Source: Octopus bimaculoides
Taxonomy: Eukaryota
NCBI RefSeq assembly: GCF_001194135.2
Contig: NC_069006.1
Span: 705,509-762,395 of the forward strand
Reading direction: 5' to 3'
Length of the DNA stretch: 56,887 nucleotides
In this document: positions 9,736 through 36,197 of the stretch, piece by piece
Numbering within the stretch: position 1 is the first letter of the stretch
Layout of the letters: every line of letters begins with the position of its first letter
Made by a program: the position numbers and the translations under genes
The notes under the pieces: generated by a model
Databases searched by the model: none
What the model saw: the letters and a program-made list of their open reading frames with translations, nothing else
What the model was told of the DNA's origin: nothing

Positions 9736-9777
<42 letters not shown>

Positions 9778-10239: not shown

Positions 10240-10299
<60 letters not shown>

Positions 10300-14141: not shown

Positions 14142-14267
14142 CTTTATATTTTTCCACTATAACTTCATATTTACCAGCTTGGAAGTGCTTACGGAACAAT
14201 TCTTGTGGTAAACTCCAGATCTGTCGACCTATGTTGTTCTCGATAATTGTACAAGATGTATTTAAGG
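14142..14267 (-). CDS. TNFR-like gene, exon E (cytoplasmic, possible death-domain N-terminal part)
   Basis: Strong acceptor tgtctgtcttttcAG|CC, phase 1, open frame (A)LNTSCTIIENNIGRQIWSLPQELFRKHFQAGKYEVIVEKYK. The 3' boundary is uncertain because three phase-1 GT donors are available. Confidence 0.68.
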
Positions 14268-14401
14268 CTGAAAAGACAGACAAAAAACAGAAAACAGTGA
14301 TGTATCTATATATATATGGACATGTCTGTGTATAGGTAACATAATATATTTACAATACATACATAATATTATGCATGTACATGCATATATACCATTTTAT
14401 A

Positions 14402-14579
14402 TATAAGGAGTTGCCGAAAAGTTCCTGGCTTTAAGGGGATCATGAAAGGCCTGGTTGGAGGCCCAACCATCTGAGCTCTTTTTACACTGCAATATGAATG
14501 TGAACAAAACCATAATTAACTGATCCTCATGTATTTTCTTTTACCTAAAACCAAGAACTTTTCAGCACACCATTGTATA
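14402..14579. mobile_element. Short mariner-type MITE
   Basis: Imperfect ~32-bp TIRs (tataaggagttgccgaaaagttcctggcttta / taaaaccaagaacttttcagcacaccattgtata) with TA at the ends. Confidence 0.6.
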
Positions 14580-14628
14580 CTCACTCTCTCTTTCTCTCTC
14601 TCTCTCTATATATATATATCAAAATAAA

Positions 14629-14915
14629 GATATCCTTGTTGCTTATTTTGATTTTAATCACCTTACTTTGAAATTGTATGGTTAATACCTTACTAAATTC
14701 CGGTGCCTAAACTTAAGTACCATATTCACCTGAATCTGAATTTTTGCTATTCAAAACGCTTAGTTTAGAATAGAGGCAGCTGACGGAGGAAATATTCTCT
14801 ATGTGGCCTGTTTTTTTTGTGACGTCCTATACCCAGATATGCATCTATATATACATGTTGATGTAGGTATGTACATACATGTACGTATATATGCATATAC
14901 TCACATATTATTTGT
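14629..14915 (+). repeat. Interspersed repeat family; further copies at 20715-20822 (+), 50430-50640 (-), 3955-3990 (-)
   Basis: Shared blocks gatatccttgttgcttatttt...aaacttaagtaccatattcacctgaatct and ...gaggaaatattctctatgtggc...cccagatatgcatctatatatacatg. Class unresolved, possibly Penelope-like terminal repeat. Confidence 0.6.
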
Positions 14916-15953
14916 ATTATTATTATATATATATATATATGTATATATGATGTGTATATAGGGATAAATTAACCAGGCAGGTACTGTATAAGCATTCTGT
15001 TGTTGTCCAGGTATTCAATGTAGACTAACTGCATTGAGTAGTAAGAAGCTCCTAGGGTTACTTAAGGTTCGTAATCCCATTGTCCCATGGATAAATCCTG
15101 GGTTCACTTCACTGGATTATGAGTATTTTGGGGAAGTGGAAATCCGAGATCATTACAAAGAATACAGAGAATGACACATCTTTATATTTTCCCTTTTTAA
15201 TTGTCATTTTTGTCAGGTATTGAACTCCTAATGAATATATAACAAGTGCTGTACCTTCGTTTAAATAATTAAAAACCACCACCACTCACATGGCATGCAT
15301 AAGTTTTATGGGAAGTTGTCCGGTTTTCATTCTATATTTCTATTTATTTATTGCCCACAGGGGGCTAAATGTAGAGGGGACAAACAAGGACAGACAAAGG
15401 GTTTAAGTCGATTACATCGACCCCCCAGTGCATAACTGGTACTCATTTAATCGACCCCGAAATGATGAAAGGCAAAGTCGACCTCGGCGGAATTTGAACT
15501 CAGAACGTGAAGCCAGATGAAATCCCGCTAAGCATTTCGCCCGGCGTGCTAACGCTTCTGCCAACTCGCTGCTTTATTTCTATATACCATGATTAAAATA
15601 AATGGGGGACACACAATTGATTCCAATTGCACTTTATGGCAATTTGGTCCTTCTTCCCATTCCTGTGCTTGTGAAATAAGCAAAAATACAAAATTCGACA
15701 ATCTTTAGTCATTTATATGGAATAATTGATTGAGATGACTGACATGCGTTTCTGGTGCACATAGAATATGCAGCTGCATTTGCAACCAGCCGTTTCCAGC
15801 TCTGTACCTTCATTCAGGGTCTCTCCACAAATGTAGTTTACTTCAAAAATAGCTGTGTGTGTGTGTCTGTGAGGAGGAAACAGAAAAGAATCCTCCCAAC
15901 TGCAACCTCTCCCCCACCCTGCCAACAAGTGGACTAACCAAACAATTGCTTAC

Positions 15954-16205
15954 CTTGTTTGCAATATTTTTCATCTTTTTTCGCGTTCTCTATCACCTGT
16001 GAGACGACAGCGTCGAGCTCCTCCTGGGTGGGTGCCCGCTTCTTGTGACTGCGTGACCTCGGTCGATGGAAGCAAAAGTAATAACACAATGCAACTATCA
16101 CCCCGACAAACAATAAGACACTCACACAGCCAACGATGATTGCCGTATTACTAGATTCTTCAACTTTCGGCTTCTCTGTTGTCAAGTTGTCACAGTTGAC
16201 AATAT
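15954..16205 (-). CDS. TNFR-like gene, exon D (stalk, transmembrane helix, juxtamembrane tail with PTQEE)
   Basis: Acceptor cgtcgtttttcAG|AT and donor CAAG|GTaagc. The 252 nt encode (D)IVNCDNLTTEKPKVEESSNTAIIVGCVSVLLFVGVIVALCYYFCFHRPRSRSHKKRAPTQEELDAVVSQVIENAKKDEKYCKQ: a ~25-aa hydrophobic run followed by a basic stop-transfer segment. Confidence 0.9.
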
Positions 16206-16879
16206 CTGAAAAACGACGGAGGGCAGAAAAAAATGATTGACATAAAAGTGGTGCAGGTGGTGGTGGTGGAATGGTTCTAACAATTATAGTATTGGTTGGT
16301 GGTTGTGGTTGCAGAAGTTATAGGTAGAGGTGGTGGTGGTTGTGGTTGCAGAAGTTATAGGTAGAGGTGGTGGTGGTAATGGTACAGGTTGCAGTATAAG
16401 TTGTAGTGGTTGTGGCTGTAATGATTGTAATGGTGGTGGTTGCTGAAGTATCCTAGTGGTAATTGTGATAGTGTTGGTGGTTGTAGTGTTGCTGGTAGTG
16501 ACAATAATAGTGATGGTGGTGGTGGTGGTGGTGGGTGTGGTGGTTGTAGCATTGACAGTGACAGTTGTTGTTGCTGTAGTGAAGGCAGTGGTGGTAGTTG
16601 TGGTCAGGTGGTTACAGTGATGGTGGTGGGTGAGGTAGTTACTGTGACACAGGATGCAGGGTGGGTGGGCTCAAGGTTCCTGCTCATCAACATATTATTC
16701 TTTGGTGGAGGGCATCTTAACATGGGGCTTTTGCAAGCTAGGGAGGGTTACTGAGGCCACAGCCGTGTCTTTATGCCAATATACAAGTGTGTGATTTTTA
16801 TTGTATGGGTTTGTTTTGGCTTGAAATGACATCCAAAAAAACAATAGCTTTAAGAATAATAAAAAAAAAACAAACTTAC

Positions 16880-16956
16880 CATCCATCACAGGTCCACAGA
16901 CATTGTCAAATGTCCCGTTACTCTTCTTTAATGTACATCGAGATACCTTTTCACAA
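16880..16956 (-). CDS. TNFR-like gene, internal exon C (last cysteine-rich module)
   Basis: Acceptor ttcttgtcttgcAG|T and donor GATG|GTaagt. The 77 nt = 1+75+1 encode (N)CEKVSRCTLKKSNGTFDNVCGPVMD, resembling the membrane-proximal C......GT...D.VC module of TNFRs. Confidence 0.85.
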
Positions 16957-17477
16957 CTGCAAGACAAGAATATATAAATATTGATATATGTGTATATATA
17001 CATATAAAATAAGTTGTGAAAATATTCGTGAAATTACTAAAATGACCAACCCACAAAACTAAAAAAGGTTTATCAGCTTGAATGGAAATAAAAGATATAA
17101 AATGTTTTATTTAATGACAATAGCAACTTGATATACTTCAACAATGATTTTGTTTAAGGTGAACGAATACAGAACGAGAAGACAAGATTGTATTTATGTA
17201 GATCATAAAGTCAGGAAGTATGAGAGGTGAATCTATTTATTTCAGCCCTTGATATCTCTAGGATTATGGCCATTTTGCATCCTTCATTATGTAATAATAA
17301 TTTCAGGGTATAATAAATTGTTTTACATGTCTGCACCAATATGCATGTTGCACACTGCACAGTACAATTGTACATTTAAAAATCACTGCAAATACAGAAG
17401 GCTAGCTCTTCAGATCACCAGAGAGCATCATCTGCCAACTCTATGAGTCCATATATTGAACTCTTTTCTCTTTCTCA

Positions 17478-17855
17478 CTTTTACTAGTTTCAGTCATTTG
17501 ACAGTGGCCATGCTGGAGCACCGTCTTTAGTCGAAGAAATCAACCCCAGGACTTATTCTTTGTAAGCCTAGTACTTATTCTATCGGTCTCTTTTTGCCGA
17601 ACCGCTAAGTTACGGGCATGTAAACACACAAGCATCGGTTGTCAAGCGATGTTGGGGGGGACAAACACAGACACACATATATAAACATATATACGACGGA
17701 TTTCTTTCAGTTTCCGTCTACCAAATCAACTCACAAGACTTTGGTTGGTCCGAAGCCATAGTAGAAGACACTTGCCCAAGGTGCCACGCAGTGGGACTGA
17801 ACCCGGAACCATGTAGTTGATAAGCAAGCTACATACCACAAAGCCACTCCTGCAC
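17478..17855 (-). mobile_element. SINE family A, full-length copy (most abundant repeat in window)
   Basis: Head gtggctgtgtggtaagaagcttgcttcccaaccacatggttccgggttcagtccc, internal TA/CA microsatellite, tail ...gcatggccactgtcaaatgactgaaactagtaaaag. Confidence 0.8.
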
Positions 17856-18527
17856 CACTACGAAATTATATTTACATATGTATTTATGTAATTAGGCAGA
17901 CAGTATAATGACCTATCTGGTTAGTGCTAAGTGACCAATGAATCACATTGGAGAGTTAAAGCATATCTGTGCTCGTTTGTCAAAAAGACACAGTGATAAA
18001 TGAATCAACTCCATGCACTTTGTAAATGGAATGAATGATAGATTCATTGGCACCAAACTCGAGGCAAAGTCTCAACCGTTGCATATTTTCTTGAATACCT
18101 CTAAATTTTCCTGTCAGAGATAGACTCATCTGTGTTGTTTGTTAGGATCAGGCCCCATCATATTTGAATGAACGGTAGATTCATTGGCACCAAACTTGAG
18201 GCCCTCAGCCGCAAAGTCTCAACCTTTACATTTTTTTCTTGGTCATCTCTACCTGTAGAGTGTATTCTTGTAGAGAATACACTTGTCTGTGTCATTTGTT
18301 AGGATCAGGCACCCTTGCATATTTTCTGTTCACTGGTCCCGTGTTGATGGGTAAAAATAAGTAAATCATAAGGTCACAAGTTTGGTTCCCCAGGGGCACA
18401 TTGTATCCTTGAGCAAGACAGTTTGTTTCATGTTGCTCCAGTCCACCTAGAAAGCAAAATGGAGTTGTCCCTGGGTCAGCCTTGTCATATTCTGCATCAT
18501 TGCTGAATCAGGATACACATGTCAGAA

Positions 18528-18851
18528 GGGGAGAGTGAAAATAAAAAAATTGTGAAAACTGAAAATGCCTGAGGGCTAAAATGTTGCTATATTTGATTAC
18601 TAGAAAAATGCTGAACTTTTGCTGAGATCAATGAATGGCAGTTACTACCTCAAGCAACCCCCAAAACTCAGAAAATGTGGGATTTTTGTAAATTTTTTAC
18701 AATAGCGGAGTATGGGAGGTTTGAGGGAGTAAATTCCCTTGACTGATCTAAGCGAAAATTTAACATTTTTCTAGTAATAATAATATATAGCAAGATTTTA
18801 GCCCTCAGGCATTTTCAATTTCCACAATTACTTTTTATTTTCACTCCACCC
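18528..18851. mobile_element. Foldback/MITE with long imperfect inverted repeats
   Basis: gagtgaaaataaaaa...gaaaatgcctgagggctaaaat...gctatat at the left is mirrored by atatagcaagattttagccctcaggcattttc...ttttattttcactcc at the right. Confidence 0.7.
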
Positions 18852-19755
18852 TAGTGTTCAGCTACTTGCATGTTGAAATTCCAAGCAGGCTGTTCTGTGA
18901 GTCAGAGAGACAGGAATATGTGTTGTCTTAACCAACAGAGTGTCAGTCTTTTTGTGTCTTTTTTTAATGTTGGATTTCAGACACATTTGGTCTGGTCTGA
19001 GCACTTACTGTGTGTACCTGTTACATTTTTCTGTGACATTTTCTTAATTATATTTATATTACCATTCTTTCTTTTCCTAGGTTATCTTTGTCACGTCTCA
19101 GTTCCTTCCTCCAGCTTAGAGATGCATCACTTTTCCTCAACACATGTGCTCTTCCGAGTATTGCTGCCAGCTGTGTAATTCCTATGGAGTTTGGTATTTT
19201 CAGCTTTCCATGCCGAAATATTGCTTTCTTTGAGATGGTCCCAACTGCATTAATCACAAAAAGTTTCACACTCACTTTTAAGGCTCCATGGACACATTTC
19301 ACTTCCAATGTTAGATCTTGGTACTTTCCAACTATTATTATTATTATTATTATGGCCAAGTGGTTAGGGTGTTGCACTGTGTGCATGAGAGAAACACTTC
19401 CCCTCATGTTGCTCTGAAATTGTATCAACGTCTGACACACGGTACACTGTGCACCTCTTCAGGCAACACCAATTTGATGGAGAGAATGAACTAACGTACA
19501 ACACAGACATTGGATCCCTATAAACAAATCATTTGTGCAGAGCGTTTGGCACAAGCTGAATGCTCATAGGTTGTCTTTGAGAGGAGAGTCCATCATTATT
19601 TAATTAGCAGTAAGTTAGAAAGGCTAACCAAGGACCAAAAATTGTTTCATGCATGGTGCTTGTCAAACTGGAATAAAATGTAAGAGAACGCCTCATTACA
19701 TGGAGCGAATGATATGATTTCCTCTGGAATGTTCATTTACTAATTTCTACAAAAC

Positions 19756-19794
<39 letters not shown>

Positions 19795-20268
19795 NNNNNN
19801 NNNNNNNNNNNNNNNNNNNNNNNNNNNNNNNNNNNNNNNNNNNNNNNNNNNNNNNNNNNNNNNNNNNNNNNNNNNNNNNNNNNNNNNNNNNNNNNNNNNN
19901 NNNNNNNNNNNNNNNNNNNNNNNNNNNNNNNNNNNNNNNNNNNNNNNNNNNNNNNNNNNNNNNNNNNNNNNNNNNNNNNNNNNNNNNNNNNNNNNNNNNN
20001 NNNNNNNNNNNNNNNNNNNNNNNNNNNNNNNNNNNNNNNNNNNNNNNNNNNNNNNNNNNNNNNNNNNNNNNNNNNNNNNNNNNNNNNNNNNNNNNNNNNN
20101 NNNNNNNNNNNNNNNNNNNNNNNNNNNNNNNNNNNNNNNNNNNNNNNNNNNNNNNNNNNNNNNNNNNNNNNNNNNNNNTGTATATTCCATATTCTATATC
20201 CCACATTGGTTTTGCAGGAATATAAATAAAACATAAAAAACAGACAGTGTTGGAACTCTTTTAAACAA

Positions 20269-20347
<79 letters not shown>

Positions 20348-21034
20348 AATCATCATCATCATTTAATGTCTACTTTCCATGCTGACAGATTAGACAACTT
20401 AACTGGAACTGGTATATATATATATGTATGTATGTGTGTATATATATATATATCCAAATAACCATTTTGACTTAGCCAGACCATATAGGCTAACCTGTAT
20501 GGTCTGGCTAAGTCAAAATGTTTTTTTGTATTCCTCCTTTCTACTTGGAGAATTTCAGATCTATTTATAAAAATATGTCCTGTTTAAATGTAATTTCAGT
20601 AAATTTCTATATCTTTGGGCAGCTGAGGATTGCTCTGCATTTTACATTTGATGTAATGTTCACATTGCTTAATTAAATGGAGTCGCATGAAACGATCGTA
20701 CGGTATTAACTTTGGATATCCTTGTTGCTTATTTTAAATTTAATCACCTTATTTTGAAACTGTATGGATAATCCCATACTAAATCCTGGTACCTAAACTT
20801 AAGTACCATATTCACCTGAATCTATATATGTGTGTGTGTGTGTGTGTGTGTATAAATAACCAACAGATAAAAGAAATGATCGATTAGTTAACAATAAAGG
20901 AGTGAAATTGAACCAATGCATTTGTGTATTTATTATTACTGGTGTTGTGACCCTCCCAAGATGTGAGATTTCTTTTAACAAACCAACTCCCATTAAGAAT
21001 CTTACAAACCAAATATGCAAAACTGAAATAGAAA

Positions 21035-21069
<35 letters not shown>

Positions 21070-21234
21070 TGTGTATATATATACATGCACTCACACATAC
21101 AAGCTATATACATACATTTTCAGTTTGATGCCAATGATGATGATGATGCAGAATAAGTTGACTTTGGCAAGGTTTGAACACAAACCTGCAGGACACAGAG
21201 ATTGATTTATATATGCATAAAAAAACACATGCAC

Positions 21235-21281
<47 letters not shown>

Positions 21282-21583
21282 ATATATATGTATATACGAC
21301 TGAATGTTTTCTATAATCTGGTGCCAAAGGCGATGGTGGTAGTGACACCGTTTTACAAAAAGGGGTGAAAGGTCAAGTTGACTTTGGCAGGATTTGAAAC
21401 CCAGAACTGTAGGACACAAAGGTAAATTAGAAAGAAAACAAACGGAATAAAATGAAATAAAATGCAACCCACATCAAAACAAATAGAGAAAACAGTTTGA
21501 AATTTTGTTAATTCAGTGCCAAATATTGACTTACAATTCCATCCTGTCCCACATTGCAAGTGTATATGCATGTGTGTGTGCTA

Positions 21584-21623
<40 letters not shown>

Positions 21624-21899
21624 TACACATATATACACACACATATGCATATCTTTTGTCTTTTCCTGGCTTGAGTTATTAAACTGTGACCATTTTGGGG
21701 CTCTGTTTTGAAGGGTTTTAGTGAAATGAATTGACCTAGTTCATATTTTTGAAAACCTGGACCTTATTCTATTGGTCTCCTTTGCCAAACTGCTAGGTTA
21801 TGGGAATATAAACAAACCAACACTGACAGTCAAGCAGTGTTGGGGGTCCAACACAAAGACACACCCACACAGTCATAGAAACACACACACACACACATA

Positions 21900-22022
21900 T
21901 GTGGAAGGACCTCGTGGAGGAGGGAGACCCAGGAAGACATGGGATGAAGTGCTGAGCCTTATGACAGAGATGACAAAGAACTGAGATACATGGCACCTAG
22001 CTGTACTCAAGAAGACCCACCC
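21900..22022 (+). mobile_element. RTE-class LINE ORF2 3' end fragment
   Basis: VEGPRGGGRPRKTWDEVL...EMTKN*DTWHLAVLKKT contains the characteristic GRPRKTW C-terminal motif. Confidence 0.7.
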
Positions 22023-24012
22023 NNNNNNNNNNNNNNNNNNNNNNNNNNNNNNNNNNNNNNNNNNNNNNNNNNNNNNNNNNNNNNNNNNNNNNNNNNNNNN
22101 NNNNNNNNNNNNNNNNNNNNNNNNNNNNNNNNNNNNNNNNNNNNNNNNNNNNNNNNNNNNNNNNNNNNNNNNNNNNNNNNNNNNNNNNNNNNNNNNNNNN
22201 NNNNNNNNNNNNNNNNNNNNNNNNNNNNNNNNNNNNNNNNNNNNNNNNNNNNNNNNNNNNNNNNNNNNNNNNNNNNNNNNNNNNNNNNNNNNNNNNNNNN
22301 NNNNNNNNNNNNNNNNNNNNNTATATATATATATATATGTATGTATTTATATATATATATACATACACACACACACAAACACATGGCAGGTTTCTTTCAA
22401 TTTCCATCAAACAAGGCTTTGCTCAGCTTAAGAACATTGTAGAAGACATTTGTCTAAAGTGCCAAGCAGTGGGACTGAACACAGAACCATGTGATCGAGA
22501 AGCAAACTTCTTACCATACACACAAGCATAATATACATATGTTGTGATTAAAAACAAAAATCTCTTCCTTTTCTTCAGGGCCATTAACCATCATCATCAC
22601 CACCACCACAACTATCATCATCATCATCATAAATATCACATCACCAACATCATCATCACTATCACCTAGTGTTTATTTAGTAGAATGCAGCAAAAGTATA
22701 AGAGGTTTGTGTGTGTGGGGGGATAGGGGATAGAGACAGGGGAACAGATTGCCTTCAGGGCAAAAACAAACAGACAAAACAAAAGAATAAAAAGAATAGC
22801 AATCAAATAAAAGGAAAAAAATTCAAGTGCAGGGTGGGTCAGGTGGAAGGGAATAGAAAGGTGGGGGGAGGTAATTTGGATGGAGGGGGCCAGGGGTAGT
22901 GGTGGTGATGGTGGTGGTGGTGGTAGTGAGGGTGATAGTGGTGGTAGTGATCGCGATGGTGGTGGTGGTGGTGTTGTCGATGGTGGCGGGGATGTTAGTG
23001 ATGGTGTGCATAAATGTTATTGAAACTGAGAAAGGTAATGTTGGGAAGNNNNNNNNNNNNNNNNNNNNNNNNNNNNNNNNNNNNNNNNNNNNNNNNNNNN
23101 NNNNNNNNNNNNNNNNNNNNNNNNNNNNNNNNNNNNNNNNNNNNNNNNNNNNNNNNNNNNNNNNNNNNNNNNNNNNNNNNNNNNNNNNNNNNNNNNNNNN
23201 NNNNNNNNNNNNNNNNNNNNNNNNNNNNNNNNNNNNNNNNNNNNNNNNNNNNNNNNNNNNNNNNNNNNNNNNNNNNNNNNNNNNNNNNNNNNNNNNNNNN
23301 NNNNNNNNNNNNNNNNNNNNNNNNNNNNNNNNNNNNNNNNNNNNNNNNNNNNNNNNNNNNNNNNNNNNNNNNNNNNNNNNNNNNNNNNNNNNNNNNNNNN
23401 NNNNNNNNNNNNNNNNNNNNNNNNNNNNNNNNNNNNNNNNNNNNNNNNNNNNNNNNNNNNNNNNNNNNNNNNNNNNNNNNNNNNNNNNNNNNNNNNNNNN
23501 NNNNNNNNNNNNNNNNNNNNNNNNNNNNNNNNNNNNNNNNNNNNNNNNNNNNNNNNNNNNNNNNNNNNNNNNNNNNNNNNNNNNNNNNNNNNNNNNNNNN
23601 NNNNNNNNNNNNNNNNNNNNNNNNNNNNNNNNNNNNNNNNNNNNNNNNNNNNNNNNNNNNNNNNNNNNNNNNNNNNNNNNNNNNNNNNNNNNNNNNNNNN
23701 NNNNNNNNNNNNNNNNNNNNNNNNNNNNNNNNNNNNNNNNNNNNNNNNNNNNNNNNNNNNNNNNNNNNNNNNNNNNNNNNNNNNNNNNNNNNNNNNNNNN
23801 NNNNNNNNNNNNNNNNNNNNNNNNNNNNNNNNNNNNNNNNNNNNNNNNNNNNNNNNNNNNNNNNNNNNNNNNNNNNNNNNNNNNNNNNNNNNNNNNNNNN
23901 NNNNNNNNNNNNNNNNNNNNNNNNNNNNNNNNNNNNNNNNNNNNNNNNNNNNNNNNNNNNNNNNNNNNNNNNNNNNNNNNNNNNNNNNNNNNNNNNNNNN
24001 NNNNNNNNNNNN

Positions 24013-24599: not shown

Positions 24600-24815
24600 C
24601 AGAGGAGAGACAGGGCTATCTATGGGTGGCCTTTGGGAAAGTGGGAAACCTCATAAGTCCCAAGGCTTCCATGAAAATTGAAAGAAAGATCTTCAATGAG
24701 TACATCCTGCCAGTAATGATTTACGGCAGTGAAACAGGGGCTTTCAACCCTACTATTATGAATGCCCTCATGAATGCTTACCAGAAAATGGAGACAGGGC
24801 TGACCCAGGTGGAAG
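24600..24815 (+). mobile_element. RTE-class LINE reverse transcriptase C-terminal fragment
   Basis: WVAFGKVGNLISPKASMKIERKIFNEYILPVMIYGSETGAF...AYQKME matches the RTE post-RT motif (W.AF..L....K.K.F...ILPV..YG.ETW). Confidence 0.75.
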
Positions 24816-24884
24816 AGGAGAAATAAAGATGGTGATGATGAGGTGTCAGGACGTACCTTCAAGGGTCAAGAGAGTAATGAGGAT

Positions 24885-25170
24885 GGGGACAGAGGAACAG
24901 GTAAAGGGGACAGAGGAACAGGTGAAGGGGACAGAGAAACAGGTGAAGGGGACAGAGGAACAGGCGAAGGGGACAGAGAAACAGGCGAAGGGGACAGAGG
25001 AACAGGCGAAGGGGACAGAGAAACAGGCGAAGGGGACAGAGGAACAGGCGANNNNNNNNNNGGAACAGGCGAAGGGGACAGAGAAACAGGCGAAGGGGAC
25101 AGAGGAACAGGCGAAGGGGACAGAGGAACAGGCGAAGGGGACAGAGGAACAGGCGAAGGGGACAGAGACA
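24885..25170 (+). repeat. 21-bp purine-rich minisatellite, ~13 copies
   Basis: Unit gggacagaggaacaggcgaag. It generates the spurious (GTEEQAK)n ORFs. Confidence 0.9.
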
Positions 25171-25658
25171 GGGCATCAGGTCAGGTATGTTGGTGAGATG
25201 AATAACATATGGTTAGAGGGATGACTAGTAGATGATGAAGGGAGTAGCTGACGGGGGTGGGGATATCTGTTTTGTGGGAGGAGAAGGTGAAGGAAATAGG
25301 AGTGAGTCAGGGAGGAGGAGAAGGGGGCAGAGATGATAGGTGGTAGTGCAAAATGGTTGGGGGGGACAGCAGAATTGTAATAAAAGCCATATAAATGAGA
25401 AACAGGGAGATGATGTGAAGGGTATGTGTGTAGCGGGGGGATAGAGGGGTACTCAGTGGCTGGGTGGACATCTAAAGGTTTCAACACAGTTTCCTTCTAA
25501 TAAATCTCACAAATGTTTCGCTGACCTGAAACATTTCTATAAAAGACATCCCCGCCCCAGGGTGCCATTCATCATACAGTGGGATTAGAACTCTGGACAT
25601 GTTAAAAGAGGAGAAACAACAGAAGCAAGGAAGACGTTACAAACAAGAATAGACTTAC

Positions 25659-25737
25659 TTTTTTAATGGTTTACATGCTTGTAATCTGTCCTTTACATCT
25701 GAATACATATTTTTAGCAAGACAATTTTCACACACGC
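25659..25737 (-). CDS. TNFR-like gene, internal exon B (cysteine-rich domain)
   Basis: Acceptor tcttcttttgcAG|GC and donor AAAA|GTaagt. The 79 nt = 2+75+2 encode (G)VCENCLAKNMYSDVKDRLQACKPLK(N). Phase 1 in and phase 2 out exactly bridge exons A and C. Confidence 0.88.
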
Positions 25738-26417
25738 CTGCAAAAGAAGAGAAAGAGACATCGTTATAATCATCATCATCATCATTATTGAGTAAAAGAG
25801 CAGCACACGCCATCAGAGTGACAAAGTACAAATATATCAAACCCCACTATACCCATCATGACTACGCGTCTGATAAGGGTACACCAGGCACATGCATCAC
25901 AACCATATGTCTTTGATATGGTGATTTCATATCAAGATTAACAGTACATGACCTCGCAGGTGGGGCCCAGTTAGAATTGTCTTCAGGCTGAGTAGCTCAT
26001 CTCGCTCAAAAGGTCCCTGAATAAGGGTTGTTTAAGGATGGCGAACGAAACACTGATATTTCCAGAGATGAATTATTCAAACCCCAAAGAATTCATCTCA
26101 ACACATGGCTATGATGTTCCTCCACAACCTCTGCTCATATCGTCAGCTAATAAGGGATATGCTCAACTGGTTAAGATCAAGCAACTGACAAACAAACCTG
26201 TGGTATCATTCGGCAGAATATTTGCTGCAGCCCTTTTTGGGGTTAATTTAATAATCAGGCAACATCGATTTGATGAATTGAGTGAGCTAATACACAACAC
26301 ATACAGTGGATCACTATAAACAAATTATTTGTGCAGGTCGTTTGGCAAAAGCTGAAAAGCTCATATGTCGTCTTTGACAGGAACGTTTATTACTACTACT
26401 ACTACTACTACTACTAC

Positions 26418-26453
<36 letters not shown>

Positions 26454-26757
26454 TACTACTACTACAACACAATAAGAAGAGTGTGATGCAATATGTAATA
26501 AAATAAAGATTGATTTTGTTTATTGAACTGAAAAATATTTCAACAGCATGTTTGTCTGTCTGTCTGCAGGTTCGAAATGGAACATGAAAAATTCACAGAA
26601 ATATAGAAATTCAGAATTTCAACTGGATTATTGTTCCTAGACACGAAGACGTCATCGTGTTTTTGCTTGTTCATAATAATGAGTAAAAACAAGGCAAAAG
26701 AAAAAAAAAAGAAAAGAAAAGTAAAAAGAACTATGGAAAAAAAAAAGAAAAAAAATT

Positions 26758-28205
26758 CATGGGCCCAGGCATGGCTGAGTGGAAAGAAGCTTGTTTCCCA
26801 AACCACATGGAGTTGCAGGTTCAGTCCCACTGCAAAGCACCTTGGGTAAGTGTCTTCTACTATAGCCTAGAGCCGGCCAAAGCCTTCTGAGTGAATTTAG
26901 TAGATGGAAACTGAAAGCAGCCCATCGCATATATGTGTGTGTGTGTGTATACACACACACACACATATATAGAAAAGACCAGGAGTGGCTGTGTGGTAAG
27001 AAGCTTGCTTCCCAACCACATGGCTCCAAGTTCAGTCCCACTGTGTGGCACCTTGGGCAAGTGTCTTCTGCAATAGCCTTGGACTGTCCAAAGCCTTGTG
27101 AGTGGATTTGGTAGACGGAAACTGAAAGAAGCTTATCATATATGTGTGCTATGCACTCAGAAGGCTCTGCTATAAATCAAGCATAGGTGCTCTGCTGGGG
27201 AAAAAGAAAAGGAGTTGTCTCTGGACATGGGTAGTTCATGTCTTCTTTGTGTCCCTGAAATCTTGTTCTGTTTAAAGAAGGTGGCATCTTTGTGTTGGTG
27301 CAGCTTTGCCAGACAGGATGGTCTGCCTTGAGGCAGATTCTCTATGTTTGGATGCTCTTCCAGTTGCTCACCTTCACCTGTTACCAAGCAACGTAACATT
27401 TCCCAATGGCCAAACATGTTCATGCAGAATATTAGAAACGAATGGCACAGCTTGTACAACAGTGACACCCATTCACTTCTACCACACAAGACAACGACAA
27501 TACACACATCTGCACACTAACGAGTCATTAATTATGAATTTTTCGTTTGTTTGGTTTTGTTCAATTTTTCCATTTGCTATGTTAAATCTGTGAAATATTC
27601 ATGTTATGCAACGCACTCCCAATATTTTTACACACACACACACACATTCTTTTACTTGTTTCAGTCATTTGACTGTGGCCATGCTGGAGCACCGCCTCTA
27701 GTTGAAGAAATCAAGACTTAGTCATTGTAAGCTGAACAATTATTCTATTCGTCTATTTTTGCCAAACCATTAAGTTACGGGGATGCAAACACACCGACAT
27801 TGGTTGTCGAGTGATAGTGGAGGGACAAACACAGACACACACAAAAATATATATATTCATATATACGATGGGCTTCTTCCAGTTTCTGCCTCCCGAATCC
27901 ACTCACAAAGCTTTGGACAGTCTGAGGCCATAGTAGAAGACGCTTGCCCAAGTTACCATGAAGTGAGACTGAACCTGGGACCATATGGCTGGGAAGCAAG
28001 CTTCTTACCACACAGCCACGTCTAATATGTATACATATATATAAATGTATATATTACGAGTGGTGGGCTTCATTTAGTTTCTGTCTACCAAATCCACTAA
28101 CACGGCATTGCTTAGCCTGGGAATATAGAGGACACGTGCCCAATGTACCGTGCACTGAGACTGAACTCAGACCCATGTAGTTATGAAGCAAACTTTTTAA
28201 CCACA
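26758..28205. mobile_element. Cluster of SINE family A copies: two + heads (26758-26930, 26980-27140), one - full copy (27649-28022), one - head (28062-28205)
   Basis: Each aligns by eye to the 17478-17855 copy. Confidence 0.75.
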
Positions 28206-28455
28206 CAGACACACAGACACACATGTCTATACATGTGTGTGTGCTTGCACCTATACACACACACACACGTATAGACATGCAGTGGAGTAAAATCAGGGCA
28301 TTGATTTGTGTCCCTAATGAAAAGAAAAGGACAGCACCAACAGAACTGAAATGAGTAATCAAGTGAATATGATGCACTAAAAAGAGCTGATGAAGGTACT
28401 GCTCCAGCATGGGCACAGTGCAAATGACTGAAACAAGTAAAGGAATCATTTCAAA

Positions 28456-28509
<54 letters not shown>

Positions 28510-29195
28510 NNNNNNNNNNNNNNNNNNNNNNNNNNNNNNNNNNNNNNNNNNNNNNNNNNNNNNNNNNNNNNNNNNNNNNNNNNNNNNNNNNNNNNNNNNN
28601 NNNNNNNNNNNNNNNNNNNNNNNNNNNNNNNNNNNNNNNNNNNNNNNNNNNNNNNNNNNNNNNNNNNNNNNNNNNNNNNNNNNNNNNNNNNNNNNNNNNN
28701 NNNNNNNNNNNNNNNNNNNNNNNNNNNNNNNNNNNNNNNNNNNNNNNNNNNNNNNNNNNNNNNNNNNNNNNNNNNNNNNNNNNNNNNNNNNNNNNNNNNN
28801 NNNNNNNNNNNNNNNNNNNNNNNNNNNNNNNNNNNNNNNNNNNNNNNNNNNNNNNNNNNNNNNNNNNNNNNNNNNNNNNNNNNNNNNNNNNNNNNNNNNN
28901 NNNNNNNNNNNNNNNNNNNNNNNNNNNNNNNNNNNNNNNNNNNNNNNNNNNNNNNNNNNNNNNNNNNNNNNNNNNNNNNNNNNNNNNNNNNNNNNNNNNN
29001 NNNNNNNNNNNNNNNNNNNNNNNNNNNNNNNNNNNNNNNNNNNNNNNNNNNNNNNNNNNNNNNNNNNNNNNNNNNNNNNNNNNNNNNNNNNNNNNNNNNN
29101 NNNNNNNNNNNNNNNNNNNNNNNNNNNNNNNNNNNNNNNNNNNNNNNNNNNNNNNNNNNNNNNNNNNNNNNNNNNNNNNNNNNNNNNNNNNNNNA

Positions 29196-29380
29196 CACAT
29201 AAAAGCACCCACTACACTCTCTGAGTGGTTGGCGTTAGGAAGGGCATCCAGCTGTAGAAACTCTGCCAAATTAGATTGGAGCCTGGTGTAGCCATCTGGT
29301 TTCACCAGTCCTCAGTCAAATCGTCCAACCCATGCTAGCATGGAAAGCGGACGTTAAACGATGATGATGATGATGATGAT
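29196..29380 (+). mobile_element. SINE/LINE-tail family C ending in (GAT)n
   Basis: gttggcgttaggaagggcatccagctgtagaaac...ccaacccatgctagcatggaaagcggacgttaaacgatgatgat. Other copies at about 3705-3895, 33320-33510, 33885-34110, 40870-40955, 42645-42840, 47255-47352. Confidence 0.75.
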
Positions 29381-29772
29381 GTATATATATATACATACAC
29401 ATATACAATGTATACACACACACACACACACATTGGTGTTATCAGTATGCTCACAGCTGAATGTCTGATACAAGAAAAAGATATATACAGTCATAAAACC
29501 ATATACACTCACAAGACCATTGATAAGACCACAAATTTATATGCATATATGTATGTATATATACATGCATACATATACATGTATATATATACATATATAT
29601 ATATACATACATACACATATACATACATACATATATATATATACATACATACACATATACATACATACATATATATACATATATATATACATTTATACAT
29701 ATATATATATACGTTTATACATATATACACACATACATATATATACACATACATATATATGTACATATACAA

Positions 29773-29830
<58 letters not shown>

Positions 29831-30235
29831 NNNNNNNNNNNNNNNNNNNNNNNNNNNNNNNNNNNNNNNNNNNNNNNNNNNNNNNNNNNNNNNNNNNNNN
29901 NNNNNNNNNNNNNNNNNNNNNNNNNNNNNNNNNNNNNNNNNNNNNNNNNNNNNNNNNNNNNNNNNNNNNNNNNNNNNNNNNNNNNNNNNNNNNNNNNNNN
30001 NNNNNNNNNNNNNNNNNNNNNNNNNNNNNNNNNNNNNNNNNNNNNNNNNNNNNNNNNNNNNNNNNNNNNNNNNNNNNNNNNNNNNNNNNNNNNNNNNNNN
30101 NNNNNNNNNNNNNNNNNNNNNNNNNNNNNNNNNNNNNNNNNNNNNNNNNNNNNNNNNNNNNNNNNNNNNNNNNNNNNNNNNNNNNNNNNNNNNNNNNNNN
30201 NNNNNNNNNNNNNNNNNNNNNNNNNNNNNNNNNNN

Positions 30236-30273
<38 letters not shown>

Positions 30274-30378
30274 GTATATACATATATATATATGTATGTA
30301 TATATTTACATACACAATATACACTCATATTCATATACATACACACATACATAGATGATGTATGTCTATGTATATATA

Positions 30379-30429
<51 letters not shown>

Positions 30430-30844
30430 GCACAAATATATACACATATTCACATTCGTATATACACATGCACATAGACGTGTATGTATGTATATATATT
30501 ATATATATATATGGAAAAGAGACAGAGATAAGCATATACATCTGTACAGGCGTACAGACAGACACATATACATAATGCATTGTATAACAGAGACACACAC
30601 AAACAGACAAACTGTAACAAAAGAACGAATTCAGTTCAAAACAGCCTCAAGGTATTGTAGCTACTACAACACTAACACTGCCTCTACCACCACCACCACC
30701 ACCACCACCATCCCAGTAGCATATGATTACCCTAGTAGCAGCATCACCACCACTGCTGCTGCTACTACTACCACCACTACTACTGCAGCCTATACCACCA
30801 CTACTATGTTTGAATAAAAGACAGGATGTCATGGCTGGAGTGAC

Positions 30845-31215
30845 TCTGATCGTAAGTATGATGGATTAGGAGCAACCTGGGGCTAAACAGCAATAAGGAA
30901 GGGTACACTAGATAATGTAGTCCAAGATACATTATGCCTGAATGAAAGATGGGATGGTCAGAATTGGAACATCTTCAATCATAGATACAATGCATCAGGA
31001 CTGACCTGGGGTTAAGCAACAAGGAAGGCCACATTAGATGATGTAGTCCAAGGTATACTATGCCTCAACCAGAGCAGAGATGGTTGTACCTGGAGCATCT
31101 TTGATCATAAGTGTGATGGATCAGGATTGACCTGGGGTTAAATAACACGGTAGAGCACATTAGATAATGTAGTCTAAGATACACTATGCCTCAGCAAAAG
31201 ATGGGATCATCACAA
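30845..31215 (+). repeat. Degenerate ~128-bp tandem repeat, 3 copies
   Basis: acctgggg at 30875, 31004 and 31130, each followed by cacattagataatgtagtccaagatacactatgcct. Confidence 0.75.
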
Positions 31216-32012
31216 GTGATTTATCAGCACCACCAGTACCGATACTACTACCACTAGTGCTACTACCACCACCACCACCACCACCACCACAGTGTAATCA
31301 CTGTTGCCAATACTTTTATCACCACTACTGGCAGACCACCATTACTACCACACTATGCTACGACCTCTACCACAGCATAACTGGTACCATAGCACTGCTA
31401 TTACAACTACTACCACAACTGTACACAGCTAAGGGACACGGGGGGGGGGGGTACAGGGAGTTTTACATGTTTGGAAAATGTAAATAAGAGGGGAGGGGGA
31501 CGAGCATAGTTTCTTCTATGGACGGTGGAGGTGGTGGTAGTAGTGGTTGTGGTGATTGTGGTAGTTGTAGTGATGGTGTTGCAGTTGCAGCTGATGATGA
31601 TGGTGGTGATGATGATGATGCTGGTGATGATAAATCCAAGGTGGAACATGGTCAGACAATGTAAAACAGTTTGGTTTTATTTGCCAAGCAAATATATTGC
31701 AATTGTTTGGGGTTTTATTAAACCGACTGTTTGTGTGGTATGGTTGTTGTTGTGGTTGTTGTTGGTGGTGGTGGTGGTGCTGGTGATAGTAGTGTAGGCT
31801 ACCACTGTGGTGTATCTGACTGTCATTGATGTGGTTGTTATTGCAGTGGTGGGGTGTATGGATGATGTAGAGGTTCCGAGACATAGGAATCATAATGTTA
31901 TCTACTGTAGGCACAAGGTCTGAAATTTATGGGAGCGGGGATAGAAAATTACATTGACCCTAGTGCTCGACTGGATTATTATATTATCAACCTCGAAAGG
32001 ATGATAGGCAAA

Positions 32013-32052
<40 letters not shown>

Positions 32053-32383
32053 GAGGACTCAGAGAGCACAAACCTCCGTCAAGGCAACACCAATGTCCTC
32101 TCAATGATTAGCCAGAGATGATTTTAAAAATGAGAATATCTGAAATAAACTTGACTGCTCTCACAAATGAGAATACTAAAAATGAACCGGATTGCTCTCC
32201 AAAATAAAAAAAAACAAACAAACAAAAAAGAACCCCAGAAAAATAATCCAGAATGCTTGTCCGGTACCGGATCGATCCTAAAATCTAATCAGTTCATGTC
32301 AGTTACGAGTCCAAACATCCCTGAAAGTTTCATCTGAATCCATCCAGTGGTTCTTGAGATATCTTGTCCATGGACAAACAAAC

Positions 32384-32928
32384 AATATAGTGTGGGGAAT
32401 CACTGGGACTCCCATAGTTATATTAAGAATATAGCATGGAGAGTCACTGAGAGTCCCATAGTTATATTAAGAATATAGCATGGAGAGTCACTGGGACTCC
32501 CATAGTTATATTAAGAAATATAGTGTGGGGAGTCATTGGGACTCCCAAGGTTAAATTAAGAATATAGCATGGAGAGTCACTGAAACTCCCATAGTAATAT
32601 TAAGAATATAGCATGGAGAGTCGCTGGGACTCCCAATGGTTATATTAAGTACATAGCTTGGAGAGCTACCAGGACTCCCAAAGTTAAATTAAGAATATGG
32701 CATGGAGAGTTACTGGGACTCCCATGGATATATAAAGAGTATAGCGTGGGGAATCAGCTGGGACTCATGTCGTTATATTAAGAATATTGAATGAGGAGTC
32801 ACCAGGACTCTCATGGTTATATTAAGAATATAGTATGGGGAGTCACCAGGACTTCCCTGATTATATTAAGAATATAATCAGGGGAGTCACTACACATAGT
32901 ATATTAAGAATGTAGCATAGAGAGTAAC
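32384..32928. repeat. 44-bp tandem array, ~12 diverging copies
   Basis: Unit ggagagtcactgggactcccatagttatattaagaatatagcat. Period of 44 measured between 32401 and 32445. Confidence 0.9.
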
Positions 32929-33038
32929 ATGTAGACAAAAATGTTAAAAAACACATGTAGGAAGATGTAATCCCAGAAAGACAGCATTTGAAAAATCAAA
33001 ACAAAAACAACACCACATAAATGTAATGGTTAACTTAC

Positions 33039-33199
33039 CATAGGGTCCTTGCCCATAACCTTTATCACATTCTCTGTTGGGCACACAGGCCCTCTGGTCC
33101 TCATTTTCAAAGTGGTACCCTTCAAAGCACATACAGTCGGCATCTCGAACGGTACTCCCATGGTGCTGGTATTTCATGAAACGTTGTGTACACACCTTC
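33039..33199 (-). CDS. TNF receptor superfamily-like gene, internal exon A (cysteine-rich domains)
   Basis: Acceptor tctttgttcttgcAG|G and donor TATG|GTaagt. The 161 nt = 1+159+1 encode KVCTQRFMKYQHHGSTVRDADCMCFEGYHFENEDQRACVPNRECDKGYGQGPY, with TNFR-type Cys spacing (C..D..C.C..GY...C.P...C..G.G). The phase-1 end matches the next exon. Confidence 0.88.

Positions 33200-35935: not shown

Positions 35936-35971
<36 letters not shown>

Positions 35972-36135: not shown

Positions 36136-36197
<62 letters not shown>

What the first reader, a model, noticed from the sequence alone, without database searches (positions are those of the whole stretch)
14142..33199. Hidden five-exon TNF-receptor-superfamily gene on the minus strand
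Seen: five GT-AG exons spread over 19 kb (introns 7301, 8702, 674 and 1686 nt) whose phases chain exactly (2-1, 1-2, 2-1, 1-1, 1-1). They give KVCTQRF...DADCMCFEGYHF...ACVPNRECDKGYGQGPYGVCENCLAKNMYSD...ACKPLKNCEKVSRC...NGTFDNVCGP...TM...PTQEE...GRQIWSLPQELF. The ORF track shows them only embedded in intron-derived frames and misses exon E. Known: the Cys spacing plus one TM helix is the TNFRSF architecture. From memory, the compact C..G.G....C..C module resembles 4-1BB/TNFRSF9. Inference: an invertebrate (probably cephalopod) immune or developmental TNF receptor that may be poorly annotated.
Basis: partly seen in the sequence, partly recalled or inferred. Interest (0 to 1): 0.75.

Follow-up and report, generated by a model that had tools for sequence, protein, structure and literature searches.

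The report
Partial mollusc TNF death-receptor gene
The five minus-strand exons are real and form the middle of a TNF-receptor-type gene with a death domain; the same gene exists, so far unnamed, in other molluscs, so this is an ordinary find of a known kind.

Summary
Five minus-strand exons (33039-33199, 25659-25737, 16880-16956, 15954-16205, 14142-14267) have AG acceptors and GT donors, and their phases chain. All six N gaps lie inside the two long introns, and no exon touches one. Orthologue transcripts align across both gapped junctions without an indel.

The spliced 231-aa peptide matches solved TNF receptors by sequence (CD40 1.7e-8, then RANK, DR6 and 4-1BB), although Pfam TNFR_c6 does not detect it. 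It belongs to a conserved mollusc family of about 440-540 aa. RefSeq calls these proteins "uncharacterized" in scallop, clam, limpet and Aplysia. They have four cysteine-rich domains, one transmembrane helix, a death domain (FADD 1.7e-8 by profile; fold TM 0.72-0.80) and a conserved tail.

The window holds only profile positions 53-289 of about 455. The exon or exons for the first cysteine-rich domain, and two 3' exons for the rest of the death domain and the tail, are absent from the readable sequence. "Five-exon gene" is therefore wrong.

The 4-1BB likeness is limited to individual cysteine-rich modules. The death domain rules out a 4-1BB-type receptor. The species could not be identified.

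Verdict: new member of a known kind, low interest.

The parts
33039..33199 (-). Exon A (161 nt, enters in phase 2, leaves in phase 1). It encodes the end of cysteine-rich domain 2 and most of domain 3: (x)KVCTQRFMKYQHHGSTVRDADCMCFEGYHFENEDQRACVPNRECDKGYGQGPYG.
   Evidence: Acceptor TTGTTCTTGCAG, donor GTAAGT. Family profile E 1.3e-26. tblastn with P0010 gives 1.2e-24 at 66% identity. Another species (L002) has the same acceptor and donor positions, and the snail Bulinus has the same 161-nt exon.
25659..25737 (-). Exon B (79 nt, phase 1 to 2): VCENCLAKNMYSDVKDRLQACKPLK, the first half of cysteine-rich domain 4.
   Evidence: Acceptor TTTTGCAG, donor GTAAGT. Profile E 1.1e-10. Bulinus has an exon of identical length (79 nt) and phase.
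16880..16956 (-). Exon C (77 nt, phase 2 to 1): NCEKVSRCTLKKSNGTFDNVCGPVMD, the second half of cysteine-rich domain 4.
   Evidence: Acceptor GTCTTGCAG, donor GTAAGT. Profile E 2.1e-9. 85% identical to P0010. Bulinus has an exon of identical length (77 nt).
15954..16205 (-). Exon D (252 nt, phase 1 to 1): stalk with the last extracellular Cys, the transmembrane helix, a basic stop-transfer stretch and a helical juxtamembrane region ending ...KDEKYCKQ.
   Evidence: Acceptor GTTTTTCAG, donor GTAAGC. Profile E 6.4e-16. tblastn with P0010 gives 4.5e-29. Colinearity with the orthologues selects the distal donor at 15954 rather than the in-frame GTGATA at about 15996.
16069..16143 (-). Transmembrane segment AIIVGCVSVLLFVGVIVALCYYFCF inside exon D, followed by HRPRSRSHKKR.
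   Evidence: Read directly from the sequence. The equivalent segment is a 26-residue helix (180-205) in the model of orthologue P0144.
16018..16032 (-). PTQEE in exon D. It fits the TRAF2-type PxQE pattern but is probably not a functional motif.
   Evidence: Orthologues have L[TS]x[ED]Q at this place, not PxQE. The region is modelled as helix in P0144. That PxQE is a TRAF2-binding pattern is recalled from general knowledge, not tested here.
14142..14267 (-). Exon E (126 nt, phase 1 to 1): ALNTSCTIIENNIGRQIWSLPQELFRKHFQAGKYEVIVEKYK, about the first 40% of the death domain (helices 1-3). The gene continues beyond this exon.
   Evidence: Acceptor CTTTTCAG, donor GTACAG. Profile E 4.4e-18. 80% identical to P0010. 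It aligns to the first half of the FADD and RIPK1 death domains. Bulinus has a 126-nt exon in the same phase, followed by two more coding exons.
25738..33038 (-). Intron A-B (nominal 7301 nt). It contains N gaps 28510-29194 and 29831-30235, a 44-nt tandem array and microsatellites.
   Evidence: No coding exon is missing here as judged by orthologue colinearity. An optional micro-exon cannot be excluded.
16957..25658 (-). Intron B-C (nominal 8702 nt). It contains N gaps 19795-20178, 22023-22321, 23049-24012 and 25052-25061, SINE-like copies and a 21-nt tandem array.
   Evidence: The junction CKPLK|NCEK is colinear with all orthologues.

Best explanation
The region holds five internal coding exons of a single-pass membrane receptor of the TNF-receptor superfamily that carries a cytoplasmic death domain, that is, a death-receptor-type architecture. 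It belongs to a family conserved across molluscs, with more distant relatives in nemerteans and brachiopods.

Full-length relatives have four cysteine-rich domains, a short stalk, one transmembrane helix, a helical juxtamembrane stretch, a six-helix death domain and a conserved tail of about 120 residues. The window encodes the end of cysteine-rich domain 2 through the first three death-domain helices.

Inferred mechanism, not shown here: the elongated cysteine-rich ectodomain binds a trimeric TNF-family ligand. Clustering then lets the death domains assemble with death-domain adaptors of the FADD/RIPK1/TRADD type, which drive caspase-dependent death and/or NF-kB-type signalling in immunity or development.

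The 5' exon or exons (first cysteine-rich domain, start codon) and two 3' exons (about 159 nt and about 350 nt by analogy with the snail gene) lie outside the window or inside assembly gaps.
For: Exon model:
- Splice sites and phases were read directly.
- There are exactly five colinear profile hits, and each exon has a strong tblastn match to the transcript-derived orthologue P0010.
- Intron positions, phases and exon lengths are the same in Bulinus truncatus (161/79/77/246/126 nt against 161/79/77/252/126) and in L002.
- All 13 conserved Cys are kept.

TNFRSF ectodomain:
- The window peptide alone gives CD40 1.7e-8, and all 14 PDB hits are TNFRSF.
- The family profile gives RANK 7e-13, CD40 1.2e-11, DR6 3e-9, OPG, 4-1BB, DcR3 and p75NTR.
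- Foldseek on the P0144 model gives CD40, RANK, 4-1BB, DcR3, DR6, TNFR2 and p75NTR.

Death domain:
- The intracellular profile gives FADD DD 1.7e-8 and RIPK1 DD 1e-6.
- A mollusc-only profile gives RIPK1 DD 0.0085 and FADD 0.02, and 9 of its 10 hits are death domains.
- The models are confident here (pLDDT 85-94).
- The fold search of P0004 is topped by FADD, TRADD, RIPK1, ankyrin, PIDD, TNFR1 and Fas death domains, with target-normalised TM 0.72-0.80 (FADD hits) at 2.4-3.0 A.
- Relatives in Lingula pass the Pfam Death threshold.

Family: members are in Mizuhopecten, Mercenaria, Patella, Aplysia, Bulinus and Tegillarca.
Against: - Pfam TNFR_c6 gives no hit for the window peptide or for any of the 14 family members scanned. 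Pfam Death is below threshold in all of them.
- Only about half of the expected coding sequence is in the window. A complete, expressed gene at this locus is therefore not shown: no start codon, no signal sequence, no second half of the death domain, no stop codon.
- There is no transcript evidence from the source species.
- Ligand, adaptors and biological role are inferred from family knowledge only.
Confidence: 0.9

Rival explanations
1. The five exons are a truncated copy or unprocessed pseudogene fragment of the family gene. It would lack its 5' and 3' ends, and the functional copy would lie elsewhere in the genome.
For: No match to profile positions 1-52 or 290-end anywhere in the readable window, on either strand. 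The exon E donor (GTACAG) is weaker than the others, and reading through it gives a stop after four codons.
Against: All five reading frames are open and all splice sites are intact. All 13 conserved Cys and the death-domain core residues (W, L) are retained. Identity to the nearest orthologue is evenly high across the exons at 59-85%. Introns here run to 7-9 kb, and 14 kb of 3' flank and 24 kb of 5' flank hold 13 N gaps, so the missing exons are easily explained by distance or gaps.
Confidence: 0.07
2. It is the mollusc counterpart of 4-1BB/TNFRSF9. That would be a co-stimulatory-type receptor signalling through TRAF-binding motifs in a short tail.
For: 4-1BB is among the sequence hits (1.1e-3) and the structure hits (target-normalised TM 0.44-0.48). 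The last cysteine-rich module of P0004 is 37% identical to mouse 4-1BB over 30 aligned columns. The window has a PTQEE that fits PxQE.
Against: CD40, RANK and DR6 score better by orders of magnitude. The cytoplasmic region is a death domain, which 4-1BB lacks. PTQEE is not conserved in any orthologue.
Confidence: 0.02
3. It is the mollusc orthologue of p75NTR, the proposed ancestral 'PITA' receptor with four cysteine-rich domains and a death domain. It would then act mainly in neurotrophin-type signalling.
For: It has the same overall architecture of four cysteine-rich domains, a transmembrane helix and a death domain. The preprint 10.1101/2021.12.26.474206 reports p75NTR-like receptors in molluscs and brachiopods. 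The p75NTR ectodomain and death domain do appear among the hits.
Against: p75NTR is a weak hit (ectodomain 2.3e-3 against 7e-13 for RANK; death domain 6.6e-3 against 1.7e-8 for FADD). The accession numbers of the preprint's mollusc and brachiopod proteins could not be checked, because no supplement is held.
Confidence: 0.1
4. The exon chain is a chance alignment of cysteine-containing ORF pieces in repeat-rich DNA.
For: The window is full of low-complexity ORFs, some of them Cys-rich from (TG)n/(CA)n repeats.
Against: Five colinear profile hits at E 1e-26 to 2e-9, with nothing else below 0.07. Splice sites fall exactly at the ends of homology. Intron positions are conserved in a snail.
Confidence: 0.005

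Closest known systems
Unnamed mollusc proteins: Mizuhopecten yessoensis LOC110460945, Mercenaria mercenaria LOC123527594, Patella vulgata LOC126827483, Aplysia californica LOC101860934, Bulinus truncatus Btru_011485, Tegillarca granosa KUTeg_002634; and the transcript cluster P0010/P0143/P0144
   Same: Colinear over all five exons. Identity is 41-49% to full-length bivalve and gastropod members and 70% to the P0144 cluster. All cysteines are shared, and intron positions and phases are the same in Bulinus.
   Different: Those proteins have an extra N-terminal cysteine-rich domain, the rest of the death domain, and a tail with PSAP and a terminal PVQASS-type end. None of these is visible in the window. 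Their databases call them 'uncharacterized', 'TNFR-Cys domain-containing' or 'Death domain-containing'.
CD40 (TNFRSF5) and RANK (TNFRSF11A) ectodomains
   Same: These are the best sequence and structure matches for the cysteine-rich region. The window peptide residues 8-102 align to CD40 residues 67-166 (domains 3-4). The family profile aligns over about 147 positions to RANK domains 1-4.
   Different: CD40 and RANK have no death domain and signal through TRAFs. Identity is only about 24-28%. Several modules here have one disulfide fewer or one more than in CD40.
Vertebrate death receptors with several cysteine-rich domains (TNFR1, DR6/TNFRSF21, Fas, DR3)
   Same: They share the architecture of cysteine-rich ectodomain, one transmembrane helix and a cytoplasmic death domain. 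The DR6 ectodomain hits at 3e-9, and the TNFR1, Fas and DR3 death domains appear in the fold matches.
   Different: No one-to-one orthology is shown. The death domain is closest to the adaptor-type domains of FADD and RIPK1. The family also has a long conserved tail after the death domain.
p75NTR (TNFRSF16)
   Same: Four cysteine-rich domains, a transmembrane helix and a death domain. The CxC...GY motif at the domain 2/3 border looks alike (recalled from memory). It gives weak hits in both domains.
   Different: It scores far below RANK/CD40 for the ectodomain and below FADD/RIPK1 for the death domain.
4-1BB (TNFRSF9)
   Same: Compact two-cysteine modules. The last module is up to 37% identical over 30 aligned columns, and target-normalised TM is 0.44-0.48 for the ectodomain.
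   Different: 4-1BB has no death domain. Its overall E-values are weaker (1e-3 to 1e-4). It is known only from vertebrates (general knowledge).
Described mollusc TNFRs with death domains (Crassostrea gigas: 17 TNFRs, 4 with a death domain; scallop Azumapecten/Chlamys farreri TNFR)
   Same: They show that death-domain TNFRs are an established class in molluscs, linked to immune and stress responses (PMC4979521).

Membership tests
TNF receptor superfamily | Extracellular cysteine-rich domains with TNFR-type cysteine spacing, recognisably homologous to solved TNFR ectodomains | tested here: met
   The window peptive alone gives 14 of 14 PDB hits as TNFRSF, best CD40 at 1.7e-8. The family profile gives RANK 7e-13. 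Foldseek on the orthologue model gives CD40, RANK, 4-1BB, DcR3 and DR6. All 12 extracellular Cys are conserved.
TNF receptor superfamily | Hit to the curated Pfam model TNFR_c6 (PF00020) above its gathering score.
   No hit, even at E <= 10, for the window peptide. No hit for the 14 family members. More distant relatives do hit it (P0064 at 9e-27, P0076). The modules here deviate from the six-cysteine model.
TNF receptor superfamily | Single-pass membrane protein with the cysteine-rich domains outside the cell | tested here: met
   There is one 25-residue hydrophobic segment followed by HRPRSRSHKKR (positive-inside) in exon D. It is modelled as a helix in P0144. A signal peptide was not seen: the 5' exons are missing, and the orthologue transcript L003 has none.
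TNF receptor superfamily | Binds a trimeric TNF-family ligand | not testable with these tools
   Needs binding assays with ligands of the same species.
Death receptors (TNFRSF members with a death domain) | A cytoplasmic six-helix death domain in the protein family | tested here: met
   The profile gives FADD DD 1.7e-8 and RIPK1 DD 1e-6. The mollusc-only profile gives 0.0085-0.03. The fold search is topped by FADD, TRADD, RIPK1, TNFR1 and Fas death domains, with target-normalised TM 0.72-0.80 (FADD hits). Pfam Death is only sub-threshold in this family.
Death receptors (TNFRSF members with a death domain) | A complete death domain encoded at this locus | tested here: inconclusive
   Exon E encodes only about the first 42 residues (helices 1-3). 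The remaining part, about 53 aa on one 159-nt exon in Bulinus, was not found in window 1-14141, which contains five N gaps.
4-1BB / TNFRSF9 | Closest relative among TNFRs is 4-1BB | tested here: not met
   4-1BB scores 1.1e-3, against CD40 1.7e-8 and RANK 3.7e-5. With the family profile it scores 8e-5, against 7e-13 for RANK.
4-1BB / TNFRSF9 | Short cytoplasmic tail without a death domain, signalling through conserved TRAF-binding motifs | tested here: not met
   A death domain is present. PTQEE is not conserved in the orthologues.
p75NTR / 'PITA' lineage | Four cysteine-rich domains + transmembrane helix + death domain | tested here: met
   Seen in the full-length orthologues. The window itself shows domains 2 (end) to 4, the transmembrane helix and the start of the death domain.
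p75NTR / 'PITA' lineage | Specific sequence affinity to p75NTR in the cysteine-rich cluster and the death domain | tested here: not met
   The p75NTR ectodomain scores 2.3e-3 and its death domain 6.6e-3. Both are far weaker than RANK/CD40 and FADD/RIPK1. No phylogeny was made.
Mollusc LOC110460945-type family | Colinear similarity over the whole available length, shared cysteine framework and shared intron positions | tested here: met

The most novel reading that the evidence does not exclude
The gene represents a lophotrochozoan-specific clade of death-domain TNF receptors that has no vertebrate orthologue and has never been named or studied. Its unusual traits are cysteine-rich modules invisible to Pfam; transcripts that encode no signal peptide (a type III topology with an ectodomain of about 180 residues, or alternative first exons); and a conserved post-death-domain tail with a PSAP motif and a PVQASS end. 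If so, it would be an independent death-receptor lineage in molluscs, and this locus its copy in the (probably cephalopod) source species.
Probability: 0.3. Interest if true: 0.4.

Novelty: new member of a known kind. Interest (0 to 1): 0.25.

Why it matters
It adds one correctly delimited, partial gene model for a death-domain TNF receptor in a gap-ridden invertebrate assembly. It also shows that a whole mollusc family labelled "uncharacterized" can be assigned to the TNFR death-receptor class once profiles and structure are used in place of the Pfam TNFR_c6 model.

For comparative immunology and cell-death research, it gives a candidate upstream receptor for the FADD/caspase-8-type pathway in molluscs. 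It does not change any general picture: death-domain TNFRs are already known in molluscs.

Tried and rejected
- **Pfam on the spliced peptide and on family members:** no TNFR_c6 hit, and Death only below threshold. This was not taken as refutation, because PDB sequence and fold comparisons are clear.
- **Search for the missing 5' exon or exons:** a regex for TNFR-like Cys patterns, tblastn with full-length relatives and an N-terminal HMM over all six frames found nothing.
- **Search for the missing 3' exons:** tblastn, a C-terminal HMM and the whole-family HMM found nothing.
- **Species identification:** run accessions were not found in papers. A homology search with the ORF at the window end returned only unnamed metagenome proteins. 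Exact look-ups of two read-through ORFs of exon A were not on record. The species stays unknown.
- **First word-index homology search:** it returned only five proteins and missed close relatives that the exhaustive search found later. Its silence cannot be used to claim that the gene is unannotated.
- **Link to the 'PITA' p75NTR-like set:** accession numbers are not in the text and no supplement is held.
- **Pfam on nine other ORFs of the window (suspected transposon remnants):** no hits.
- **RNA genes:** Rfam and tRNA scans found none.
- **PTQEE as a TRAF motif:** rejected as a conserved feature.

Full report
**1. What is in the sequence**

On the minus strand there are five open segments bounded by canonical splice signals:

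| Exon | Coordinates | Length |
|---|---|---|
| A | 33039-33199 | 161 nt |
| B | 25659-25737 | 79 nt |
| C | 16880-16956 | 77 nt |
| D | 15954-16205 | 252 nt |
| E | 14142-14267 | 126 nt |

Each acceptor is a pyrimidine tract followed by CAG. The spliced product is a 231-aa peptide: KVCTQRF...EKYK.

**2. The assembly gaps**

All six N runs inside the finding lie in the two long introns. Two are in intron A-B and four in intron B-C. The closest one (25052-25061) is 597 nt from exon B. Exon A, exon B and exons C-E therefore sit on three separate contigs of the scaffold.

Their order and orientation match what the homologues require. The nearest orthologue aligns across both gapped junctions (GQGPYG|VCENC and CKPLK|NCEK) without an indel. 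So no constitutive coding exon is lost in the gaps.

Two caveats apply. The two long intron lengths include estimated gap sizes. Also, Mercenaria isoform X1 and Patella carry 6-7 extra residues exactly at the A/B junction, so an optional micro-exon or alternative splice site cannot be excluded here.

**3. More than chance**

A profile of the protein family, run with all filters off over every stop-free segment of all six frames of the 56.9-kb window, gives exactly five significant hits. All are on the minus strand. They cover profile positions 53-111, 103-135, 136-161, 159-245 and 246-289, with E-values of 1.3e-26, 1.1e-10, 2.1e-9, 6.4e-16 and 4.4e-18. The next hit has E = 0.07.

All 13 cysteine columns conserved in the family within this range are Cys in the window.

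In the snail Bulinus truncatus the homologous gene has the same intron positions and phases. Its exons are 161, 79, 77, 246 and 126 nt. A genomic contig of another species has the same acceptor and donor for exon A. The colinear alignment also selects the distal donor of exon D (15954) over an in-frame GTGATA further upstream.

**4. The gene is incomplete in the window**

Exon A opens in phase 2 and exon E closes in phase 1. A homologous transcript (L001) is open upstream of the point that matches exon A (GDRCRLRKTC...).

Full-length relatives have 55-75 further N-terminal residues with a first cysteine-rich domain (CPxGHxxxxC...CxQCxxxT[FY]QPNxNxxGDxCRLR). They also have 170-190 further C-terminal residues. 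In Bulinus, two coding exons of 159 nt and about 356 nt follow the exon E equivalent.

None of this was found in the readable window, by tblastn, by N- and C-terminal profiles or by the whole-family profile. The flanks contain 13 more N gaps, and introns here reach 7-9 kb. The missing exons are therefore most simply outside the window or inside gaps. A truncated pseudogene copy is possible but has no positive support.

**5. What the protein is**

*Pfam.* It finds neither TNFR_c6 nor anything else meaningful in the window peptide or in 14 family members.

*Sequence comparison with solved structures.* This is unambiguous:
- The window peptide alone hits only TNF-receptor chains: CD40 1.7e-8, RANK 3.7e-5, DR6 9.5e-4, 4-1BB 1.1e-3.
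- The family profile hits RANK at 7e-13, CD40 at 1.2e-11, DR6 at 3e-9, then OPG, 4-1BB, DcR3 and p75NTR, over about 147 profile positions that correspond to four cysteine-rich domains.

*Structure.* An AlphaFold model of the closest orthologue, P0144 (70% identical to the window peptide), has moderate confidence in the ectodomain. Its best Foldseek matches are CD40, RANK, 4-1BB, DcR3, DR6, OPG, TNFR2 and p75NTR.

*Transmembrane segment.* One 25-residue hydrophobic segment followed by HRPRSRSHKKR gives the membrane span.

**6. The cytoplasmic part is a death domain**

- A profile of the intracellular region of the family and its brachiopod and nemertean relatives hits the FADD death domain at 1.7e-8 and the RIPK1 death domain at 1e-6.
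- A profile restricted to molluscs plus the window's exon E still gives death domains in 9 of its 10 hits, but only at 0.0085-0.03.
- The region is modelled with pLDDT 85-94.
- The fold search with the P0004 model is headed by FADD, TRADD, RIPK1, ankyrin, PIDD, TNFR1 and Fas death domains. Target-normalised TM-scores for the FADD hits are 0.72-0.80 at 2.4-3.0 A, with Foldseek E-values of only about 0.02-0.5.
- Two Lingula relatives pass the Pfam Death threshold.

Exon E of the window encodes ALNTSCTIIENNIGRQIWSLPQELFRKHFQAGKYEVIVEKYK. This aligns to helices 1-3 of these domains.

**7. The family**

The exhaustive profile search found 137 proteins, 12 of them below 1e-30. The full-length members are:
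- Mizuhopecten yessoensis LOC110460945
- Mercenaria mercenaria LOC123527594
- Patella vulgata LOC126827483
- Aplysia californica LOC101859829/LOC101860934
- Bulinus truncatus Btru_011485
- Tegillarca granosa KUTeg_002634

RefSeq calls all of them "uncharacterized" or "hypothetical". UniRef's automatic names are "TNFR-Cys domain-containing" or "Death domain-containing".

The closest cluster (P0010/P0143/P0144/P0145) comes only from assembled sequencing runs and carries no name. It is 70% identical to the window peptide, against 41-49% for the full-length bivalve and gastropod members. This fits two species of a third mollusc class. "Cephalopod" is reasonable, also given the AT-rich, microsatellite- and SINE-laden DNA with long introns, but it was not tested. 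Attempts to name the species failed.

More distant relatives are in Lineus and Lingula. Beyond those the hits are generic TNFRs named 1B-like, 11B or 21-like. No one-to-one vertebrate orthologue emerges.

**8. How it most likely works (inferred)**

By analogy with solved TNFR-ligand complexes and death-receptor assemblies (established knowledge of TNFR1, Fas, DR6 and p75NTR), three steps are expected:
- The rod of cysteine-rich domains binds in the grooves of a trimeric TNF-family ligand.
- Receptor clustering brings the death domains together.
- These nucleate a complex with death-domain adaptors, leading to caspase-8-type apoptosis and/or NF-kB-type transcription.

Molluscs are known to have TNF ligands and death-domain TNFRs that respond to bacterial challenge (PMC4979521). 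What is shown here is only the domain architecture and its homology. Ligand, partners and outcome are not shown.

I do not count it as a motif.

**9.

[quoted passage not shown] is right. "Five-exon gene" is wrong, because these are internal exons.

The 4-1BB likeness is real at the level of single compact modules. The last module is up to 37% identical over 30 aligned columns, and 4-1BB structures give the highest target-normalised TM-scores for the ectodomain. But CD40, RANK and DR6 score much better overall, and the death domain excludes a 4-1BB-type receptor.

Whether the gene is unannotated in its own genome could not be tested. The first, word-index search missed relatives that exist in the collection, so its silence proves nothing.

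**10. Verdict**

This is a genuine, well-supported partial gene for a death-domain TNF receptor, belonging to a conserved but unnamed mollusc family. It is a new member of a known kind and of modest interest.

The most interesting loose ends lie outside the window:
- Orthologue transcripts with in-frame stops before the ATG and no signal peptide, against a Patella isoform that has a hydrophobic leader.
- The conserved PSAP...PVQASS tail.

Noticed in passing
window 13630-13819, 17677-17890, 26948-27137, 27849-28062, 35957-36170; shorter pieces at 12454-12535, 22443-22524, 55441-55522: A dispersed repeat of about 200 nt (SINE-like) occurs in both orientations in the introns and flanks of the gene. 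Copies are 67-88% alike. It produces the recurring '...FQFPSTKSTHKALVGPRL' pseudo-ORFs in the ORF list.
   Followed up: partly
window 24885-25167: A tandem array of a 21-nt unit (13.5 copies, 88% matches) spans the 10-N gap 25052-25061 in intron B-C. It reads as a long GTEEQAK-type ORF, which is almost certainly not coding.
   Followed up: partly
window 32384-32925: A tandem array of a 44-nt unit (12.4 copies, 77% matches) begins about 115 nt downstream of the exon A donor, inside intron A-B. A further 126-nt x 2.5 repeat lies at 30889-31207.
   Followed up: no
window 56549-56887 (+), running off the window end: An open frame of 113 aa has four homologues (50-67% identity) on small metagenome contigs and no Pfam hit. 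From memory its ...KTGKAPGPSGI... stretch looks like the start of a retroelement reverse-transcriptase ORF, but this was not verified.
   Followed up: partly
L003 1-240 (transcript of the closest orthologue, P0144); P0156 (Patella isoform X1): The orthologue transcript has in-frame stop codons just before its ATG, and only nine residues precede the first cysteine, so it has no signal peptide. One Patella isoform instead starts with a hydrophobic leader. This suggests alternative first exons or a type III membrane topology for the family.
   Followed up: partly
family alignment A3/A5, C-terminal 120 residues (not in the window): After the death domain, all full-length members share a tail with FPC, KLL, a P[ST]PSAP motif and a terminal P[VI]QA[ST][ST]. 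No function is known.
   Followed up: no
P0152 (Mercenaria isoform X1) and P0009/P0156 (Patella), at the position of the window's exon A/B junction: Six to seven extra residues are inserted exactly at this junction in some isoforms or species. This suggests an alternative splice site or a micro-exon. A counterpart could lie in the gapped intron 25738-33038.
   Followed up: no
whole window: There are 19 N gaps, most of them flanked by (TA)n/(CA)n microsatellites. Several apparent long inverted repeats (for example 6600-7143 with 49451-49994) are just N runs plus microsatellite matching each other, so they are artefacts of the repeat finder.
   Followed up: yes
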